Origin: Sminthopsis crassicaudata
Taxonomy: Eukaryota
DNA length: 64,000 bases
Assembly (NCBI RefSeq): GCF_048593235.1
Contig: NC_133617.1
Coordinates: 421,766,958-421,830,957 of the forward strand
Direction: 5' to 3'
Positions within the stretch are counted from its first letter, which is position 1. Every line of letters starts with the position of its first letter. This document shows, piece after piece, positions 19,231 to 52,110 of this stretch. The notes below the pieces were generated by a model that was not told the DNA's origin, made no database searches, and worked only from the letters and a program-made list of their open reading frames with translations. Position numbers and translations under genes: made by a program.

Positions 19231-20602
19231 TTTGTTCCCTTCTTTCTCATAAACTAGGGCTCACTCTCCTACAGAATAGACAGAACAAACATGAAAGGAC
19301 ATCCATGTAAGGAATACGTGGCTAAAGTCTTTCTGCAGAGATTCATATAAGAAACACAAGTGTCCTGGACTCAGGGATAGAGGTATAGAATACATTGAGA
19401 CACAGTAGCAGGACACACATGGAAAAACTCAGTTCAACTGCTGACATAAGACTTTTCCTGATCCCTATAGTGGCTACTGCTTCCCTCCCTCTTGCTCTAA
19501 CTTGTGAGGGCCATCTCCAGTTGTTTTTATTTTAGATCACTGGATCCAGATGGTTCTGGAGGGGAAAGTGAGGCAGGTAACCTTGCCTAGCCCTTCTTCA
19601 CTCAATCCAATGACATCACTTCCCTGATGTCTAGAATGCAGTACAAACAACAACAATTAACTTGTATTTATTTTGTACACAGTTACATACATATGAACAT
19701 GTCATTTCTCACAAAATAATATAAGCTACTTGAAGGCAGAAACTGCTTCATTTTTGGCTTTATATCGGTTGCAAAGAGCCTGGCACATAGTAGGTGCTCA
19801 ATGAATGCTTATTTATTGATTGAAGAAGTGAGGAATAAAATAAGCATTAATTAAAGCTCCCACAATAAGTCAAGCATAGTATTATAGTCTTTATAAATAT
19901 TATCTTAATTCTCACAGCAACCCTGAGAGATAAGTACTATTATTATCCTCATATTATAGTTTTAATCTTTTATAGAAAAGATTTAAAAACAAACAAAAAA
20001 CCTTGGACCAAGACCAGGAAAAAGCATTCCTTTTCTTCTTCGTTCAGAAGAATGAAGCCTTTTATCTCCCAGAGGCCAAATTTTTGAAAATAAAGAATAG
20101 AGGGCTTCCAGCCAGCTAATGCCTTGAAGATTAATCTTTTCTTTGGCTTTCACTTCCTAATCCAGGAGATTTGATCATTCAGTCCAAGACCTAGCCTTGC
20201 TTAATGGTAAATACTCCATATACCTCCCAAATTGTTTTCTCTGAAGACTACATGACAAGTAATGATTATTCATTCAGTTACCATGGAGCAGTTCTGGGAT
20301 TCAGAGTTGTTTAACTTTCAGATCTTGTCTCTAAAGTTCTTTCTAGGAGTGAGTGAGGAAAAAGGTGGGGAAATGTGTTAGACCCTGAAAAAGGCTTTTA
20401 TGTCAACTTAACCTCTTCATATACTTTTGTTGTCAGAAAAGGCATCTACAGCTAGATTTGAACTTAGGCAGCTAAATGGAGCCAACCTAGAACAGAAATA
20501 CAGCTCAATATAACCTCTGTCTACCTCTCAACTCTTTATATACTTTTAGTATACAGGCCCATTGCTGGCCCTCCTCCTTTACGTACTACACAAAGGGTAT
20601 GT

Positions 20603-20798
20603 AAAGGCAGAAGAGGGAATGAGAGGTGAAAGAGGAAAGGGAAGCTGAAGAAGGGAGGAGGAAGGAAGTATGGAGGGAAGAGATGGAAAAAGAAGGGAAA
20701 GGAGGAGGAGGGAGTAGAGGGAGAAGAAGGGGGAGAAAAGAAGGGGAAAGAGGAAAAGAAATGAAAGAGGCAAGGAATAAGATGAGGGGGGAAGAAAA
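20603..20798 (+). repeat. ~195-bp polypurine/polypyrimidine tract
   Basis: Almost exclusively G/A on the + strand; abuts the PNLDC1 retrocopy. Confidence 0.95.
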
Positions 20799-20803
20799 TT
20801 TTA

Positions 20804-22094
20804 GGATTGTCAATATTTTCAAGCATAGCAAGAATGTCAAACAAGTATACAGGTAATTTATATAAATTTTTTTCTCATCCCTACCACACTTGGGATTATG
20901 GATTTGGAGTTCTCCTTCCAGCCCCCTAATATTCTATTTTTGAATCAATACAATTTTGACTATAAGTTCCTCAAAAATGGGATCAAATATGTGAACAAAT
21001 GTCAGGGGAAGAAAATTAAGGAAGAACTTCTATCAGGAAATTAAAAAGCTTATAGTACATTGGACAAAGATTAAATGGAGGTTATTGATAAGGTCACATG
21101 ATGTTTAGAGATGGCAAAAGGAGATTAGATATAACCAGGTTCCTGTTATAATTTATATAATTAGGTTTTAGCCTTTTTGAGGTACATTTAACACTGACAC
21201 AGGCTTTCTCCACAGCTTGGACCCTGAGGAAAAACAAAGGGCTGCTAGTTAAGAAAAGAAAAAGGAAACACCAATGGCATCTAGAAAATTCCTCTTGTAA
21301 CCATGATGACTACAAGAGGTAGAAGATTCTCCTCTATGCCCAGAGCTTTTTCCAGATGCTGGCAAGTCAGAAGGCCTTTGGTGGGACATAATATGATGGT
21401 GGATCTTTTATACTTTCATGAAAAATTTTACAGACTTCTCCCAGAATCCTATGAGCAGTTTAAACTGAACATCCATGGCTTGTTTCCTGTCCTCATAGAT
21501 ACCAAGAATGTGTCAAAAGGGATTTGGAAGGAAATAAGTTTCCCAATAGCTTCAAAGATTTTGGAAATTTATGAAGTTCTAAACAGTGACCTGAATCCTA
21601 CCAAGAATTCTTGTCCAGTGGTCATCTATTTGTGCAAATGAATGTATCAAACATGTTGAGACTAAATATCCTCATGAAGCAGCTTATGACACCTTCCTTT
21701 ATACATTTTTTTAAGTGGCACACTTATTATATGGATCAACTAATAGGGTAAAACTAGAACCCACATTCCATCAATTTCTTGATGTACTGGCTCTCTATGA
21801 GAACTAGATGAACCTTATCCAAACATCTATCTCTAAAATGAATAAAGGCAATCGTGGTTTGAGACCAATGCAAGCTCACTCTGTTTAAGCTGGGTGGGAT
21901 GGATATTCCCCTAATGACCTTTTGAAATTCTCTGGTCCAAATTCTCCAAGAAGCCTCTATCCTCAAAGGCAAGAGGTATCCTGGGACAAAGAACAGATAT
22001 ATTATGAGTTCAAGGACCTCTATAAATTTGATGTCCTGTATTTCACCCGGAACTAGCTTCTCCTTATGACCAACAAGTTCAATGATGTCAGAAT
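20804..22094 (+). pseudogene. PNLDC1: Processed pseudogene (retrocopy) of PNLDC1, PARN-like piRNA 3' trimmer; 5'- and 3'-truncated
   Basis: Intronless, colinear peptide blocks match remembered PNLDC1: GLSIFS..NKY, PTTLGIMDLEFSFQ, FLNQY, KFLKNGI, VIDKVT, PLVGHNMMVDLLYFHEKF..LPESYEQFK..LFPVLIDTKNV, LNSDLNPTKNS, PHEAAYD, FSGP, KFDV..TNKF. Multiple stops and frameshifts. Confidence 0.92.
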
Positions 22095-23010
22095 GGTTGC
22101 CCAGAGAAGTTCATGAGTAGAGTCTGTCAGTTTCATGATGGCATGCTTGCTTAGGTTCTGGACAATGGACAATGCTTTTAAGTTTCCCAATCACCAATGG
22201 AGTGAAACAAGGCTGTGTTCTTGTTCCCAACAAGGATAAACATGAAATCAAAGTCAGCTACCAGAGTGATGATAAATTCTTCAACTTGAAAAGGCTGCAA
22301 GCCAAAGCTAAAGTAGAGGAAGTGTTGGTGCATGATTTTTTGTTTGCAAATGATTGTGTATTCAATGCAGCTTCCAAAGCTGAGATGAAACAAACTATGG
22401 ACCAATTCTCTGCTGCTTGTGCTACTTTGGATTAACTATTAACACCAAGAAAACACAGGTACTCCATCAGCCAGCACCACACCATCCAAATATGGAACCA
22501 TCAATTACAGCAAATGGTGAAGTTTGGAGTGGTGTGGATAAGTTCTTTTACCTTGGCAGTATGCTTTCCAGGAATGTTTACATTGATAATGAGGTTGACA
22601 CACACATTGCCAGAATTAGCAATTGGGAAGCTCCAGAGGAAAGTGTGGAAGAGGAAAATTACATGACCAAAATGAAGGTCTACAGAGCCCTTGTGCTGAT
22701 TTCATTGTTGTATGCCTGTGAAGCCTGGACAATATATGAGGTCCATGCTAGGAAATTGAAACACTTCTATCTGAATTGTTTTAGGAAGATTCTGAAGATC
22801 ACCTGGCAGGATAAGTTATCAGACACTGAGGTCCTTTCTCCAACTAAACTACCAAACATTCCAACTCTGCTACAGAGAATACACCTCTGATGGGCTGGTC
22901 ACATTGTTGGAATGCCAAATGTGGGCTTGCCAAAAAGATTATTTTATGGAGAACTCATACCAGGAAGTGCTCATAAAGTGGTCAGAAAAAGGGATACAAG
23001 GGCACTCTCA
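22095..23010 (+). mobile_element. RTE-clade LINE, 5'-truncated, reverse transcriptase region (left part)
   Basis: GCPEKFM..QFHDGML, FPITNGVKQGCVL, LFANDC (degenerate YADD), GLTINTKKT, FFYLGS, KVYRALV..LLYACEAW; ORF fragments 22172-22435 and 22417-22890. Confidence 0.9.
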
Positions 23011-25550
23011 ATTCCTCTCTTTTAAAGTGGAAGCTATAAGGTCCTGGGTAATCCTGATTGTGGCTCTTTAATATTTGAATTGTTTTCTTCTTCTGCTTAC
23101 AGTATTTTCTCCTTGATTTGATAATTCTGAAATTTAGCCATAATCTTCCTTGGAGTTTTCATTTTGAGGGTCTTTTTCAGGAGCTAATCAGTGAATTTTT
23201 TCCATGGCTATTTTACCCTCTGGTTCTAAGACATCCAAGCAGTTTTCTTTGATGATTTCCTGAAAGATGATGTCTAGGCTCTTTTTTTTTCATCATGGTT
23301 TTCAGGACATCCAATAATTCTTAGATTGTCTCTCCTACATCTATTTTCCAGGTCAGATGTTTTTCTAATGAGGTATTTTACATTTTCTTCTATTTTTTCA
23401 TTTTTTGGTTTTGTTTAACTGATTTTGAAGTCTCATTGAGTCATTTAATTCCGTTTGTTCAATTTTAATTTTAATTTAAAAAAATTTATTAGTTTTTTAT
23501 TTATATGCATGGGTAATTTTTCAACAAAGACCCTTGCAAAATCTTCTGTTCCAAATTTCCCATCCTTCTCCCCACCCCCTCCCCTAGATGGCAGATAGTC
23601 CAATACATGTTAAATATGTTAAATTATATGTTAGATCCAATATATGTATACATATTTATACAATTATCTTGCTGCTCAAGAAAAATTGGATCAAGAAGGG
23701 AAAAAAACTGAGAAAGAAAGCAAAATGCAAGCAAACAACAACAGAAAGAGTGAAAATTCTATGTTGTGGTCCACTCTCAGTTCCCACAGTCCTTTCTCTG
23801 GGTGTAGATGGCTCTCTTCATCACTGAACAATTGGAACTTGTTTGAATCCTCTCATTGTTAAAGAGAGCCATGTCCATCAGAATTGATCATCATATAGTC
23901 TTCTTGTTGCTATGTATAATGATCTCCTGGTTCTGCTCATTTTACTTAGCATCAATTCACATAGGTCTCTCATGTAAGTCTCTGAAATTATCCTGCTGGT
24001 CGTTTCTTACAGAACAATAATATTCCATAACATTCATATACCAAAAATTATTCAGCCATTCTCCAATTGATGGGCATCCACTCAGTTTCCAGTTTCTTGC
24101 CACTACAAAGAGGACTGTCACAAACATTTTTGCTCCTGTGGGCCCCTTTCCCTCCTCTAAGATCTCTTTGGGATATAAGCCCAGTAGTAGCACTGCTGGG
24201 TCAAAGGGCATTCACAGTTTGATAACTTTTTGAGCATGGTTCCAAATTGCTCTCCAGAATTGTTGGATCCATTCACAGTTCCACCAACAATGTATCAGTG
24301 TCCCAGTTTTCTCACGTCCCCTCCAACATTTGTTAATATCTTTTTCTGTCATCTTAGCCAATCTGAGAGTTGTGTAATGGTATTTCAGTTGTCTTAATTT
24401 GCATTTCTCTGATCAATAGTGATTTAGAGCCCCATTTTAATTTCTTCATCTGAAAATTGTCTGTTCATATCCTCTGACCATTTATCAGTTGGAGAATGGC
24501 TTGATTTCTTATAAATTTGTGTCAAATTCTCTATATATTTTAGAAATGAGTCCTTTATCAGAACCTTTGAATGTAAATTTGTTTTCCCAGTTTTCAATTT
24601 TAATTTTTAGTGAATTATTTTCTTTTTTTATTTCCTTTTGCATTTGGCCAATTGAATTTTTATATGAAGAGTTTTGTTCATTGCATTTTTTTCCATTTCA
24701 CAGATGTCATTTTTTACTGAATTGGTTTCTTTTTCATATTTATTTTGTAAGGAGTTACATGTATGCTTTTTCCATTTTATCAAGTCTATTTTTAAAGGAG
24801 TTTTCTTCAGATAATTTCTGGTTTTCTTTTTCCATGACCTCTTGCAAATATCTCATGTCCTTTCCCCATTTTTCTTCTAATTCTTTTAAGATCCTTTTTG
24901 AATTCTTCCAAGAGAGTCTTGTGAAATGGGGATCAACTCATATCACCCTTTGGAGCTTCATCTGGAGCTTACTTCTTTAAGATACTCAGGGTTTGAGATC
25001 TTTCTTCTCTTTCTCCATAAAAGCTACCTGTGATCAGAGTTCTTTTTGGTTTTTTGCTCATTTTTTTAAGATTGAGGTCTGCTCTTAAGACAGAGGGGTA
25101 ACAGTCGCTTTAGTTTGCCCTGAAGCCCATACTACTGACTGACTTCAGGTGCTGGGTAAGTTCCCATTCTTCCAGAGTTCATTAGCTCACAATTTACCTT
25201 TTGTATTTGCTTTACAGATTTGCTGAATCACCAGCTTGCAACCAGGACAGAATAGCATAATAGCCTCACAGTAGATTCCCGGGTGCTGAAGGCCCCAACA
25301 CTCTGGTTCCCTGCCCCAGGGCTCCCTGCACTGTGGTCTGGACTCAGTAGCCTCTCCCCTACCTTCTTGAAACAGACCTATTCTGAAGTTCTTCCAAAGT
25401 ATCTTCTTCTGGAAATTTGTTGTACTCCAAATATTTGTGGGTTCTGTCACTCCAAAAGTTCAGGGCCTTAATCTGCTGTTAATTTAGAGAAGCTCCAAGG
25501 AGGTCTAATCGATATGGTATCTGCTTTCCGCCATTCTGGCTCCACTCCCC
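23011..25550 (-). mobile_element. L1 5' portion (5' UTR plus part of ORF1), interrupting the RTE and itself interrupted at 23473-24593
   Basis: Reverse complement begins GGGGAGTGGAGCCAGAATGGCGG (L1 5' terminus motif); ORF1-type AT-rich sequence; no poly(A) or TSD seen. Confidence 0.75.
23473..24593 (-). mobile_element. Younger 5'-truncated L1 (ORF2 C-terminus plus 3' UTR)
   Basis: ORF 23957-24211 (PFDPAVLLLGLYPKE...WYMNVMEYY); G-rich 3' UTR; perfect 14-bp TSD tcaattttaatttt at 23459-23472 and 24594-24607. Confidence 0.92.
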
Positions 25551-25863
25551 AAGATCTCCCTTAAGAACTTTAGAACTGATTGTGTGACACAGGAGACACT
25601 GGCACCAGACGCCCAGCATGGTGAGCGATCTTCAGAGATGGCACTGCTCTCTATGAGCAAAGCTAAATTGAATTAGTTCAGAAGAAACGGGAGATTCGCA
25701 AAGTTAGAAAAGCCACCCCAAATGTTCATAGGGACTGTTTGTGCTGGACCCGTGGCAGAGCACTCCCAGTTCCTGTTGGGAGCTACAGTCCGGCAAATTG
25801 TAATTGGAACTAGTGACAGTCATTTTGGAACTCTTCGAAAACAGAGGGAAACAACTAACCAAT
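25551..25863 (+). mobile_element. RTE LINE 3' end (continuation of 22095-23010)
   Basis: Resumes the RTE reading (ggcactctca|agatctcccttaagaacttt); ends in a CAA-type tail acaactaaccaat. Confidence 0.8.
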
Positions 25864-26149
25864 CGATTGTGCTTGGTACAACCATACTTTCCTACTTCAT
25901 CTTTCTGTACAGGTGAAGGCAAGGAGCTGAGTTCTTAGATGCTTTCTTTTTCATTTTTTTTTTTTTTTTTCAAATGCCAGAAGTCTCGTAGTAACACAGG
26001 CCCACCGCTAGAGGGCTGCGGCTCTCCTTCCCAAAAGCAGCAAGGTAAGAGAGTGCACCTTTTGGTTTGGCAAGAAGAGGGAGGATTCATAAGGTCCTTA
26101 TCCAGCCTAGACCTCCGAGGAGAAATGGTCTATCTGGTAAAAGTCAGGC

Positions 26150-27160
26150 TCAAGGATATCTCTGGGGACTCCAAAAGCCAGCCTGCCCCTCTCCCCAGGG
26201 GACTCCGGCCGGTGGCCAAAGGAAGGACTCTGGACGGCGGTGCTACCCCGGCCCAAGCGCAACTGGCACCAGCTGGAAGGGCTATGAGTGCCCGCAGTTC
26301 GGCGGTGGGGCTTCAGAGGGAGCTATGGAGCTGTCCTTAGTCGGGCCGGCTGGACTGGATCCTAAGGGCGGTGTTTAGGGCTGGGAGGCCGGCCCAGGGA
26401 GGAGGGACCGAAGGAGGAGACTGCAGCAGGCTCACAAGAGGCTTCGACAAGCCGGGGCGGCTGGGGATGCCCAGGTGCTTCTCGGAGCGCATCGCAGCAC
26501 AGCCCGTACGCACATCCCTTCCCACTGTCAGGTAGCTCTGCAGCTGTCCCGAACCGGACTTCACTTCCTCAAAGCCCCAAGGTGAGTTTTCAAGTACCGA
26601 GGGAATAGGCATCTAGAGATGTTCCCAGAGGTGCCCCTCTGTGGAAGCTGGTTCGAATATATGGGACTCCGCGTCCGTCTCCGGTTGCCGGTAGTTCTGC
26701 TGGTCCGACAACGTGCTTTCCTTTCCTCTCTGCTCTCAATATAAAATTTAAGCTGGCCTTTTTCTCAGTCGGGGTCTGAGAGTCTGACACCAGTCATCTG
26801 AATTTCCCAAATAGAGCAAAACCAGGACTAACCCCAGAATCTGGACCAAACCTCCCCTGCCCGCTAAGCAGGGATGATTTATAAGCAAAGTATCCCTGTA
26901 GCCTTGATTTAGTGGGTGCGCAGAAAACTGCTGAGCACACCTGAAGCCACGGTGAAGAGTCCATTGTCTCACAGCTCAGCTCCCTCTAGCTACATTCCGG
27001 CAGCGAGAAGTCCCCGGGACCCTTTGCTCTCAATGATCTGAGTACCGAAGCACCGAATCCTGAAAATCAGATTCTACTGACATTCCAACTACGACCGGCC
27101 CTTGGCATTTTGCTTTAGGTCTAGCAGTTTCAGCGAATTGGTTGATTTCAACCTCGTACT
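26150..27160. promoter_or_regulatory. CpG/GC-rich promoter region of SCNN1G, no obvious TATA box, GC boxes at 26366-26371 and 26455-26460
   Basis: Sharp local rise in GC and CpG density in an otherwise CpG-poor window; two GGGCGG motifs; ~5 kb upstream of the first coding exon. Confidence 0.75.
26400..26581 (+). other. SCNN1G: Putative non-coding exon 1 (5' UTR) of SCNN1G; start approximate
   Basis: Strong donor AAG|GTGAGT at 26581/26582 inside the CpG island; mammalian SCNN1G has a non-coding first exon. Confidence 0.65.
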
Positions 27161-38620: not shown

Positions 38621-40399
38621 GTAAGAAAGTGGGAATTACGGTTTCTCGGGTATGATTAGGACAGTAGGAAGATCCTTTTAAAAATGTCTATTTTCCTCCC
38701 TTTGGCCAAAGTTCTAGGATCTTACAACCCAGAATATTCTCAACAGAAACCATTCCTTCCCCCATTTTACTGTCTTATGCCCCAAGAAGCAGAACTACAA
38801 GTTATTGGAAGTCACAAGGAGGGAAATTTAGGCTTGAAATAAGGAAGAAAAACTTCTTAAAGAAGAACTGACATAAGATTTGCATTCATTGTCTTATTTG
38901 AACCTCATAGCAATCTTGTGAAACAGGTAATCTTATTTCTTAGCCTCATTTTATAGAGAGGAGGCTGAAACTCAAAACACTGAAAAGTGTCAGAAGTAGA
39001 ATCTAAAATCTTCCTTAGCAAGTCAAGCTGCCTCAGGCAGGTGACTCCCAACATAGAATGAAATGCCTCTGCAGGTGGTAGTGGAGAGTTGCAAGCAAAG
39101 GCTGAATGACCACTTGGGAGGAGATTCTAGGACTAACTGGCTGCTGAGTTTCCTTCCAAGCCTGAGATCTTGTGATACTGTAATGTAATGCATTATCTAC
39201 TTAGATTCCTTTTGAGATAGCGACAAAGCAGTTACTGTTTCAATGAGATATTGTTATAATTCCTCTGAGTATCAGGTTTTGAATTCCCTTGGCTTCCATT
39301 TAAAAATACAATGGACAGAGCCCTAGATTCTGCTACTCAATCTTTTTGGGTGACTTTAGGGAAATCACTTCATTTTCCTGGATCTTAAGTTTCTTCTTCT
39401 GAAAAATGTGAGGGAATTGGAAAGGAATGGGGAAGGAAGGGAATAAGCATTATAAAGCAACTACTATGTACCAGTCACTGTGCTAATCACTTTACAAATG
39501 TCATCTCATCTGACTCTCAGAACTTTTAAAGGTACATACTGTTATTATCCACATTTTGAGGATTATTGAATAGAAGTGACTTGCCTAGGTTCACACAGCT
39601 TGTAAGTATTAGAGGTTATAAGTTGTATCCACTATGTCACCAGCTGCCTGCTTAGGACTAGATGAATTCTAAGGTTCCTTTCTGTTCTAAATTTGTGATC
39701 TTACAAACCTCTTTATCTAGAAGAACCACTCAGGTAAGTTTGTTACTGATGGCTTAGGCAATGGAAATATGCCCTTATTGGCTTGTAATCGTAAAAATGA
39801 TCCTCCAGACGGTTTCACTCAGATGTCTAATCATGGCAAGGAATGTGGATTTTGGAGGCCTGTAACATCAGACACCATGCTCTGACAGGTTTTCATCTAC
39901 ATGGTATCTTTATGTTTGTAATCCTTGAAGTATTTAAGAAATAATGGTGTTCTTGGATTCTATAACTAGTATTGCCCACCTAACAATGAAAGTGGTCTTG
40001 CCCTAATACTCAACCAATTGATAACAAAGAGGCTCGAGCTGGGTGTTTATCTGGGGAGCACCCTTGTAGGGCTGACTCAGCCCCCAACACCTGTTCAAAA
40101 TAAAACACCAGATATGAAAATTGGAAAATTGCCACACTTTATCAAAGACACAAATATAAATTCGTGATAAGTATGCATGAAGTAAGATAGTCTCCATTGT
40201 AGGTGAAGAGGCCCAGTATTGGGCGAAACTGGGCTGTAGGTCAGTCAAATATCTTCCTCCATTGGGAGGAAGGGCCATAAGTTTCATCCAATAAGCATTT
40301 ATTAAACATGTACCATGTACCTAGGCACTGGGGATAGATGCAAGATTATGTGATGATCAACTATGATAGACTTAGGTTGTCTCAATAATTCAGTTATCC

Positions 40400-51720: not shown

Positions 51721-52110
51721 ATTGAGATACTGTTGTCCAACTTTGGGGGGCAGCTGGGTCTCTGGATGAGCTGCTCCGTGGTGTGTGTCCTTGAAATCAT
51801 TGAGGTTTTCTTCGTTGATTCCCTATCCATCATTACGCGACGATATTGGCAGAAAATCAAGAAGCGGTGGGCCCAACAGAACACTCAACAGGGCCAGTCA
51901 TCCTCTAGGAACCCTGAGGACCTTGCTGGCTGTGATAATCCAACTTGTGTTCTTGATGATGATCTACCTACCTTCAATACAGCTCTGCAATTGCCCCAGG
52001 CCCCAGGAGCCCAGGTGCCTGGGACCCCACCACCCAAGTACAACACTCTGCGTATTGAAAGGGCCTTTTCCAATCAACTTGAAGACACCCAAGACTCAGA
52101 AAATGTCTGA
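51721..52110 (+). CDS. SCNN1G: SCNN1G exon 13 coding part (TM2/selectivity filter, PY motif, stop)
   Basis: tttgcag|ATT; IEILLSNFGGQLGLWMSCSVVC...PGTPPPKYNTLRIERAFSNQLEDTQDSENV-TGA. Confidence 0.98.
   Translation: MEILLSNFGGQLGLWMSCSVVCVLEIIEVFFVDSLSIITRRYWQKIKKRWAQQNTQQGQSSSRNPEDLAGCDNPTCVLDDDLPTFNTALQLPQAPGAQVPGTPPPKYNTLRIERAFSNQLEDTQDSENV

What the first reader, a model, noticed from the sequence alone, without database searches (positions are those of the whole stretch)
22081..22140. PNLDC1 mRNA fused to an RTE LINE 3' half: candidate template-switch chimeric retrocopy
Seen: PNLDC1 similarity stops at TNKFNDVR (~22094) and RTE RT sequence (GCPEKF..QFHDGML) starts immediately, on the same strand, with no spacer or poly(A). 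The RTE then runs to its natural 3' tail at 25863. A cellular RNA 5' part joined to a LINE 3' part is the known signature of template switching during target-primed reverse transcription, well described for L1 (U6-L1) and much less for RTE in mammals. The junction decamer ATGTCAGAAT (22085-22094) fits both PNLDC1 (D-V-R) and the RTE M-S-K-F codons as I remember them, which suggests microhomology-guided switching. This would be a transposon capturing the mRNA of a gene from its own silencing pathway.
Basis: partly seen in the sequence, partly recalled or inferred. Interest (0 to 1): 0.8.

Follow-up and report, generated by a model that had tools for sequence, protein, structure and literature searches.

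The report
PNLDC1 pseudogene fused to RTE LINE
A dead, intronless copy of the piRNA-trimming gene PNLDC1 that lacks its own 3' end runs straight into the 3' half of an RTE retrotransposon; the join, the matching ages and the clean 3' flank fit one copying accident, but two ordinary multi-step histories remain possible.

Summary
An intronless, decayed PNLDC1 copy (20801-22094, + strand, aa ~69-479 of 533) has 7 stops and at least 8 frameshifts. It abuts a 5'-truncated RTE-type LINE on the same strand, with no spacer and no poly(A). RTE copies fetched from a public metagenome read ...IMSKFGCPEKF... The window decamer ATGTCAGAAT (22085-22094) matches their consensus at 9 of 10 bases, with a 2-base gap before GG, and it also encodes PNLDC1 D-V-R-I.

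Both refutation tests I could run failed to refute the chimera:
- PNLDC1 does not detectably resume after the RTE.
- The two parts are equally diverged, about 14-16% each.

Three things remain open:
- No target-site duplication was found around the composite or around the RTE alone. At this age that says little.
- The RTE's natural 3' terminus could not be verified.
- No outgroup DNA could be fetched.

Best reading (about 0.5): one RTE-driven reverse transcription that switched template onto PNLDC1 mRNA at a short similarity. Rivals: an RTE insertion into an older retrocopy with a target deletion, or a microhomology-mediated deletion joining two neighbouring elements. The copy cannot make protein, so the "captures its own silencer" angle has no functional support. 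Interest is modest.

The parts
20596..20790 (.). Polypurine (GA-rich) low-complexity tract directly upstream of the PNLDC1 copy. Not part of PNLDC1; origin unknown.
   Evidence: Read directly; repeat families D2, D3, D6, D9. No PNLDC1 N-terminal similarity upstream of 20800.
20801..22094 (+). Intronless, 5'- and 3'-truncated, decayed copy of PNLDC1 mRNA (aa ~69-479 of 533). 7 in-frame stops, at least 8 frameshifts, 69-71% aa identity to every marsupial PNLDC1 tested.
   Evidence: Pfam CAF1; phmmer and HMMER hits named PNLDC1; tblastn and frameshift-aware alignments. The parent genes span 18-26 kb, so the 1.3 kb contiguous copy is processed.
21844..21927 (+). 84-nt extra segment inside the PNLDC1 copy. 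It matches the read-through C-terminus of Tasmanian devil isoform X3 (...ISKIHKGSPGCRPLQAHCV), so the source mRNA likely used an alternative donor site.
   Evidence: P0231 C-terminus against the window translation.
22085..22104 (+). Junction zone. 22085-22094 (ATGTCAGAAT) is PNLDC1 D-V-R-I and also 9/10 to RTE ATGTCAAAAT. 22095-22104 (GGTTGCCCAG) is RTE G-C-P-E. The crossover lies at about 22094/22095. Relative to the RTE consensus two T are missing. A PNLDC1 exon-exon boundary falls at 22084|22085 or 22085|22086.
   Evidence: Alignment A3 and the identity profile; tblastn start at 22095; exon boundary inferred from opossum isoforms P0229 and P0230.
22095..23062 (+). RTE-type LINE, RT region, 5'-truncated inside the RT domain. 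Carries deletions of 45, 7, 5, 1 and 1 nt relative to relatives.
   Evidence: 79-80% nt identity to L001 and L002; tblastn with P0282-P0293; relatives carry Pfam RVT_1.
23063..25550 (-). Nested insertion, mainly a minus-strand L1 fragment, inside the RTE. About 34 nt of RTE sequence is present on both sides.
   Evidence: Self-BLAST hits to other window copies. Minus-strand ORFs read as the L1 ORF2 C-terminal region by eye; the Pfam scan of the 23957-24211 ORF returned no family. Duplicated RTE segment seen at 23029-23062 and 25551-25584.
25551..25863 (+). RTE 3' piece: the end of the ORF (stops at 25811-25816) plus about 47 nt.
   Evidence: Collinear continuation of the RTE ORF across the L1. 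A distant RTE C-terminus gives the best window hit here, but it is not significant. No tail copies in the window.
25864..26000 (.). 3' flank: no PNLDC1 continuation, no poly(A), and a T run at 25950-25970. It leads into a GC-rich region upstream of the ENaC-gamma-like gene.
   Evidence: Frameshift-aware and degenerate-nucleotide alignments; sequence; composition.

Best explanation
A single retrotransposition event by the RTE machinery produced a chimeric retrocopy. Reverse transcription started on an RTE RNA at the target nick and copied about 1.3 kb of its 3' part. Inside the RT-coding region, at ...IMSKF|GCPEKF..., the growing cDNA moved onto a PNLDC1 mRNA, at the start of that gene's penultimate coding exon. 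There the two RNAs share ATGTCA(A/G)AAT and, probably, more similarity just downstream. Copying continued towards the mRNA 5' end and stopped at about codon 69.

Shown: the anatomy, the seamless join, the shared decamer, the absence of PNLDC1 3' sequence beyond the RTE, and the equal divergence of the two parts.

Inferred: that the join was made at the RNA/cDNA stage and that both parts arrived together.

The product has been a neutral, dead pseudogene ever since. PNLDC1 was probably the partner simply because it is expressed in the germ line, where heritable insertions arise.
For: 1. Same strand, with an intronless mRNA copy 5' and a 5'-truncated LINE 3'.
2. No filler and no poly(A) at the join. 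RTE identity is 34/40 downstream, 9/10 in the decamer, and falls to random within 20 nt upstream. PNLDC1 aa similarity ends at the same place.
3. The decamer match has a chance frequency of 2.3e-4 per position pair.
4. The PNLDC1 copy lacks its last ~54 codons, 3' UTR and poly(A), so it is not a standard poly(A)-primed retrocopy. These parts are not found after the RTE: the target region ranks 644-679 of 854 bins.
5. Divergence from source is alike. PNLDC1 aa identity of 0.69-0.71 corresponds to d = 0.14-0.16 by simulation, with 7 stops observed against about 6 expected. The RTE shows 14.7% private changes (65/443) and 16.4% against the majority of three or more copies.
6. RTE-clade template switching is documented. 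U6-RTEX chimeras exist in Anolis, and two U6 copies associated with RTE_Mdo/RTESINE1 exist in opossum (PMC4476161). RTE-tailed SINEs have swapped heads (PMC5786205).
Against: - No TSD flanks the composite. The best flank match is at chance level (63 of 300 shuffles reach it), and a 9-mer AGGCAAGGA lies in low-complexity sequence.
- The RTE's natural 3' end, which RTE-primed synthesis needs, is not verified.
- In a simple cDNA-end annealing model the shared segment should carry the RTE version. The window instead carries the PNLDC1-type G at 22091 and lacks the RTE's TT, so a later change or an out-of-register (T.GTT) switch must be assumed.
- Part of the RTE's 'private' divergence may be subfamily difference (synonymous:non-synonymous 11:18), so equal age is only approximate.
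- Microhomology is equally expected under the rivals.
- No outgroup was examined.
Confidence: 0.5

Rival explanations
1. Two elements and a deletion. An ordinary L1-made PNLDC1 retrocopy and an independent RTE copy lay close together in the same orientation. A later microhomology-mediated deletion (MMEJ or replication slippage, at ATGTCA.AAT / T.GTT) removed the retrocopy's 3' end with its poly(A), the spacer, and the RTE's 5' part.
For: It explains the 3'-truncated retrocopy, the 5'-truncated RTE, the join inside a 9/10 shared decamer, the absence of any TSD pair and the absence of PNLDC1 after the RTE. Both element types are common in marsupial genomes (PMC3403934), so such accidents are expected a few times per genome by my own rough estimate.
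Against: It needs three events, the same orientation by chance, and equal divergence of the two parts by chance. I put that last coincidence at roughly 15-25%. Microhomologies of about 10 nt are, from general knowledge, uncommon among genomic deletions.
Confidence: 0.2
2. RTE insertion into an older, complete PNLDC1 retrocopy. The cDNA 5' end was joined to the upstream target end by microhomology, and the event deleted the rest of the retrocopy: at least 160 nt of CDS, the 3' UTR and the poly(A).
For: Microhomology-mediated 5' end attachment of truncated LINE copies, and insertion-associated target deletions, are established for L1 (general knowledge; not tested for RTE). The junction features are the same as under template switching.
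Against: The host sequence does not resume after the RTE, so a deletion of several hundred bases that removes every trace is required. From general knowledge such deletions accompany only about 1% of fixed L1 and Alu insertions. The RTE is not detectably younger than the retrocopy.
Confidence: 0.2
3. Splice-type fusion. The PNLDC1 part ends exactly at an exon end (22084/22085), everything from 22085 on is RTE, and the two were joined by cis- or trans-splicing of PNLDC1 pre-mRNA to an RTE transcript before reverse transcription.
For: The exon-exon boundary inferred from opossum isoforms X1 and X2 falls exactly where the decamer starts. mRNA/L1 chimeras ending at splice donors have been reported (bioRxiv 10.1101/2025.02.02.635956).
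Against: The RTE consensus has TT (or TA), not AG, before ATGTCA, so there is no acceptor site. The window decamer has the PNLDC1-type G at 22091 and the PNLDC1 register (no TT). Under this model the 9/10 resemblance of the RTE to the next PNLDC1 exon would be pure coincidence (about 1e-3).
Confidence: 0.05

Closest known systems
L1 chimeric retrocopies (U6/L1, other small RNA/L1 and mRNA/L1 bipartite retrogenes)
   Same: A cellular RNA copy 5', a 5'-truncated LINE 3', the same orientation, and direct fusion. They are interpreted as one TPRT event (PMC4476161; PMC2104539; bioRxiv 2025.02.02.635956).
   Different: Here the LINE is RTE-type with no poly(A), and the partner is joined at an internal mRNA position rather than at its 3' end. 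The join sits in a 9/10 decamer. U6/L1 joins have been attributed to RNA ligation (PMC6789731), which would not give microhomology. Those cases are validated by a TSD around both parts, and none is detectable here.
U6-RTE-clade chimeras (Anolis RTEX-2; two opossum cases with RTE_Mdo and RTESINE1)
   Same: An RTE-clade reverse transcriptase joining a cellular RNA to an RTE 3' part. The opossum cases likewise lacked an obvious TSD and were left undecided (PMC4476161).
   Different: The partner there is the snRNA U6. Here it is 1.3 kb of a spliced protein-coding mRNA.
RTE-tailed composite SINEs and bipartite non-autonomous RTEs (WALLSI, MAR4, RTESINE1/2, Bov-tA)
   Same: Foreign 5' sequence fused to an RTE 3' tail, explained by template switching or recombination, and mobilised through the tail (PMC5786205; PMC3747384).
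   Different: Those are amplified families with short tails. This is a single, dead, one-off copy that keeps 1.3 kb of RTE coding sequence.
Ordinary processed pseudogene interrupted by a later LINE insertion
   Same: An intronless decayed gene copy next to a LINE fragment.
   Different: The pseudogene would have to resume after the LINE. That was tested and not found.

Membership tests
LINE-mediated chimeric retrocopy (single TPRT event with template switch) | Two parts from different RNAs, same orientation, fused without genomic spacer | tested here: met
   PNLDC1 reaches 22094 and the RTE starts at 22095, both on the + strand.
LINE-mediated chimeric retrocopy (single TPRT event with template switch) | The 5' part is an intronless copy of a cellular RNA | tested here: met
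   aa 69-479 are contiguous in 1.3 kb, whereas the parent genes span 18-26 kb.
LINE-mediated chimeric retrocopy (single TPRT event with template switch) | The 3' part is a 5'-truncated LINE that keeps its natural 3' terminus | tested here: inconclusive
   5' truncation inside the RT domain is shown. The ORF end plus about 47 nt is present. The true terminus is not verifiable, because no reference tail was found.
LINE-mediated chimeric retrocopy (single TPRT event with template switch) | One target-site duplication flanking the whole composite | tested here: inconclusive
   No significant flank match. At about 15% divergence a short TSD would mostly be erased.
LINE-mediated chimeric retrocopy (single TPRT event with template switch) | Both parts have the same age | tested here: met
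   PNLDC1 d is about 0.14-0.16. The RTE shows 0.147 and 0.164. The estimate is approximate.
LINE-mediated chimeric retrocopy (single TPRT event with template switch) | Both parts are gained together (an empty site in an outgroup) | not testable with these tools
Standard (poly(A)-primed) processed pseudogene | [quoted passage not shown] | tested here: not met
   The copy stops 54 codons before the stop codon. There is no poly(A) at 22095 or after 25863.
Pseudogene interrupted by a later LINE insertion | The host sequence resumes after the LINE, usually with a short TSD | tested here: not met
   No PNLDC1 tail at 25864-26000. No shared k-mer of 6 nt or more at the RTE edges.
RTE-clade non-LTR retrotransposon | An RT domain that groups with RTE elements | tested here: inconclusive
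Close relatives carry Pfam RVT_1 and read ...LWKIMSKFGCPEKF.... Distant relatives share the motif.
RTE-clade non-LTR retrotransposon | A short 3' UTR without a poly(A) tail | tested here: met
   ORF stops at 25811-25816, and there is no A-run in the next 150 nt.

The most novel reading that the evidence does not exclude
An RTE-clade ('stringent') LINE reverse transcriptase in a marsupial performed a homology-guided, internal-to-internal template switch from its own RNA onto a spliced germ-line mRNA. This is the only way such an element could retropose part of a protein-coding transcript. If so, 3'-truncated retrocopies abutting same-strand RTE 3' halves should be over-represented genome-wide and would form a so far uncatalogued class of mammalian retrocopies.
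Probability: 0.45. Interest if true: 0.45.

Novelty: new member of a known kind. Interest (0 to 1): 0.33.

Why it matters
If this was a single event, it would be a documented case of an RTE-clade LINE joining itself to a protein-coding mRNA in a mammal. So far only U6 partners in a lizard, two undecided opossum cases and SINE heads are on record (PMC4476161; PMC5786205). The join would point to short sequence similarity as the guide for the switch.

It would also give a simple search image for a genome-wide count: a 3'-truncated retrocopy followed by a same-strand RTE 3' half.

It has no bearing on piRNA biology. The copy is a dead fragment without the N-terminal catalytic part or the C-terminal tail. 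As one decayed locus with an unresolved history, it is of modest interest.

Tried and rejected
1. I first thought PNLDC1 resumed right after the RTE (S-IVL...FLYR against R-IVLQEY...LYRYW). Frameshift-aware protein-DNA alignment scored 18-34 there, against a window background of 35-46. A degenerate back-translated nucleotide alignment ranked the region 644-679 of 854 bins. Rejected as chance.

2. The same scan found the best window-wide match to the missing C-tail (aa 486-532) at 40254-40113 on the minus strand. Shuffle tests gave 1/200 and 0/200, and tblastn gave E 0.06-0.14. Identity is only about 36-46% against about 70% for the main copy, there is no poly(A), and it lies next to what I read as a MIR-like SINE tail in an ENaC intron. 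I judge it probably chance.

3. TSD searches around the composite and around the RTE alone found nothing above chance.

4. I tried to fetch parental PNLDC1 gene DNA from opossum, wombat and sugar glider. No DNA was served. So there is no nucleotide-level parent, no 3' UTR and no orthologous-site test.

5. I looked for an RTE 3'-tail reference through window self-search, a distant RTE C-terminus and papers and supplements. Nothing usable turned up.

6. The JGI metagenome scan returned only distant RTE-like elements, at most 67% aa identity.

7. The splice-mediated fusion idea is disfavoured, because the RTE consensus has no acceptor site there.

8. N-terminal PNLDC1 codons 1-66 are not present upstream.

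Full report
**What is there.** The window is marsupial-like DNA. Its PNLDC1-like sequence is about equally similar to all marsupial PNLDC1 proteins tested. An ENaC-gamma-like gene lies downstream on the + strand, with its start-codon exon at about 31488 and its last exon ending at 52107 (Pfam ASC).

From 20801 to about 22094 the + strand carries a contiguous copy of PNLDC1 coding sequence.
- Two stop-free pieces hit Pfam CAF1 at E 3.5e-7 and 1.4e-18.
- A full-database phmmer search and a follow-up search return proteins named PNLDC1.
- A frameshift-aware alignment to eight marsupial orthologues covers aa 69-483 in 400-404 codons. Identity is 69-70% (71% if a match to any species counts). There are 7 in-frame stops, 8 frameshifts and 11 gap events.
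- The parent genes span 18-26 kb, so this 1.3 kb copy is processed.
- Codons 1-66 are absent upstream. A GA-rich tract (20596-20790) precedes the copy.
- The copy also carries an 84-nt segment (21844-21927) that matches the read-through C-terminus of a Tasmanian devil isoform. The source was therefore an alternatively spliced mRNA.

**The RTE side.** No second RTE copy exists in the window, so I looked for relatives elsewhere. A protein search with the longest RTE ORF piece found short host-derived contigs in one ENA metagenome. Their DNA (L001, L002) is 79-80% identical to the window, but L001 starts 13 nt short of the junction. A second search found further ORFs from the same sample. These read ...VSHEGLWKIMSKFGCPEKFINIVHQFHDGMFAQVLDNGQ..., and their contigs L085-L087 span the junction.

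The RTE consensus there is GGAAAATTATGTCAAAATTTGGTTGCCCAGAGAAGTTC. The window reads AGTTCAATGATGTCAGAAT--GGTTGCCCAGAGAAGTTC.

| Window segment | Identity to the RTE consensus |
|---|---|
| 22095-22134 | 34/40 |
| 22085-22094 | 9/10 |
| 22075-22084 | 5/10 |
| further upstream | 1-2/10 |

These figures are. tblastn with the RTE ORFs starts at 22095. Distant RTE-like elements also read IM(S/K)KFGCP.

A match of 9/10 or better occurs in 2.3e-4 of PNLDC1/RTE position pairs. That is roughly 1e-3 once a few registers are allowed.

**Fine structure of the join.**
- Within 22085-22104 the window is PNLDC1-like on the left. It has G at 22091, the Arg codon AGA, where the RTE has A, and it lacks the RTE's TT.
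- It is RTE-like on the right (GGTTGCCCAG).
- The crossover is therefore at about 22094/22095.
- In the ungapped register the local shared bases are only T.GTT. The decamer similarity is offset from that register by 2 nt.
- Either the switch used the decamer and TT was lost later, or it used the short T.GTT match next to it.

I cannot decide between these without the parental mRNA. The PNLDC1 codons beyond D-V-R-I are inferred from protein only.

Opossum isoforms X1 and X2 differ by a 99-nt exon that begins inside the Asp codon. A PNLDC1 exon-exon boundary therefore falls exactly where the decamer starts. A splice-type fusion is unlikely all the same, for two reasons:
- The RTE has no AG acceptor there.
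- Under that model the decamer's resemblance to the next exon would be unexplained.

**The rest of the RTE.** The element is not continuous to 25863. RT-coding sequence runs to about 23062. A 2.5 kb insertion follows. It contains minus-strand ORFs that I read as L1 ORF2-like, although a Pfam scan of one of them returned no family. The RTE ORF resumes at about 25551, and about 34 nt are duplicated on both sides of the insertion. The ORF stops at 25811-25816.

I could not verify that 25863 is the natural 3' terminus.
- No tail copies or RTE-tailed SINEs matching it occur in the window.
- A distant RTE C-terminus gives its best window hit here, but not a significant one.

**Tests of the interpretation.**

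*Does PNLDC1 resume after the RTE?* By eye it seemed to, but it does not. The marsupial tail IVLQEYRYHPDLQVTLYRYWRHSPN... scores 18-34 at 25864-26000 against a window background of 35-46. A degenerate-nucleotide alignment ranks the region 644-679 of 854 bins. No poly(A) or A-rich remnant lies between the RTE and the GC-rich region at 26200-26800.

*Are the ages different?* No.
- Simulated neutral decay of the conserved codons gives aa identity of 0.715 at d = 0.14 and 0.682 at d = 0.16. It predicts about 6 stops per 404 codons. The observed values are 0.69-0.71 and 7 stops.
- The RTE differs from the L001/L002 agreement at 65 of 443 sites (14.7%). It differs from the majority of three or more copies at 23 of 140 sites (16.4%).
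- A mild excess of synonymous changes (11:18) suggests that part of the RTE figure is subfamily difference, so the equality is approximate.

*Is there a TSD?* None was found around the composite or around the RTE alone. At about 15% divergence per copy this is uninformative.

**Weighing.** One event explains everything seen: orientation, the seamless join in shared sequence, the missing mRNA 3' end, the clean 3' flank and the equal ages.

The rivals need two or three events and a coincidence of ages. Each step is common, however, and microhomology is expected for all of them. The rivals are a microhomology-mediated deletion between neighbouring elements, and an RTE insertion with a large target deletion.

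RTE-clade switching onto cellular RNAs is documented for U6 in Anolis and was left open for two opossum cases that also lacked TSDs (PMC4476161). RTE-tailed SINEs show repeated head swapping (PMC5786205).

| Explanation | Confidence |
|---|---|
| Template switch | about 0.5 |
| Deletion between neighbouring elements | about 0.2 |
| RTE insertion with target deletion | about 0.2 |
| Splice-type or other | about 0.1 |

**Function.** None is expected. The copy lacks the first ~68 residues, which hold the first DEDD catalytic motif (DIEFTGL) according to the orthologue sequences. It also lacks the C-terminal hydrophobic tail, and it is full of stops and frameshifts. That the partner is a piRNA-pathway gene is most simply a by-product of germ-line expression. 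This last point is inference from general knowledge of PNLDC1.

**Verdict.** This is a real and correctly described junction. The proposed mechanism is plausible and survived the tests I could run, but it is not proven. It would be a new member of a known kind, and it is of modest interest.

Noticed in passing
window 40113-40254 (minus strand): The best window-wide match to the PNLDC1 C-terminal tail that the retrocopy lacks (aa 486-532: RYLTDLQPSFAQYWASSP...). Shuffle tests gave 1/200 and 0/200, and tblastn gave E 0.06-0.14. Identity is only about 36-46%, with two frameshifts. It sits in an intron of the ENaC-gamma-like gene, next to what I read as a MIR-like SINE tail. Probably chance, but it is exactly the missing piece.
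   Followed up: partly
window 21844-21927: The PNLDC1 retrocopy contains 84 nt that canonical marsupial PNLDC1 proteins lack. The segment matches the read-through C-terminus of Tasmanian devil isoform X3, so the source mRNA seems to have used an alternative donor inside that intron.
   Followed up: partly
window 22084-22086: A PNLDC1 exon-exon boundary, inferred from opossum isoforms X1 and X2 (a 99-nt exon is skipped), coincides with the first base of the decamer shared with the RTE.
   Followed up: partly
window 23063-25550: A minus-strand L1 fragment is nested in the RTE. About 34 nt of RTE sequence (23029-23062 and 25551-25584) appears on both sides, which is unusually long for a TSD.
   Followed up: partly
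window 20596-20790: A 195-nt polypurine (GGAA/GAGG-like) tract lies immediately upstream of the 5'-truncated PNLDC1 copy. Its origin is unknown: a simple repeat, or filler acquired at integration.
   Followed up: no
window 26200-26800 and 31488-52107: A GC-rich stretch (GC 0.52-0.68, CpG o/e about 0.6) lies 0.3-0.9 kb downstream of the composite. It precedes an ENaC-gamma-like gene (Pfam ASC) whose start-codon exon begins MAPGEKIKAKIKKNL. It is a likely promoter or first exon, so the composite sits just upstream of it.
   Followed up: partly
window 25950-25970: A run of about 20 T on the + strand, 90 nt after the RTE end. It is a poly(T), not a poly(A), on the strand of the composite.
   Followed up: no
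L001, L002, L085-L087 (ENA ERZ27259999): One public 'metagenome' assembly holds many short contigs of marsupial-type RTE copies. L001 and L002 each have about 4-5% private divergence. This is presumably host DNA contamination. It served here as the only RTE reference.
   Followed up: partly
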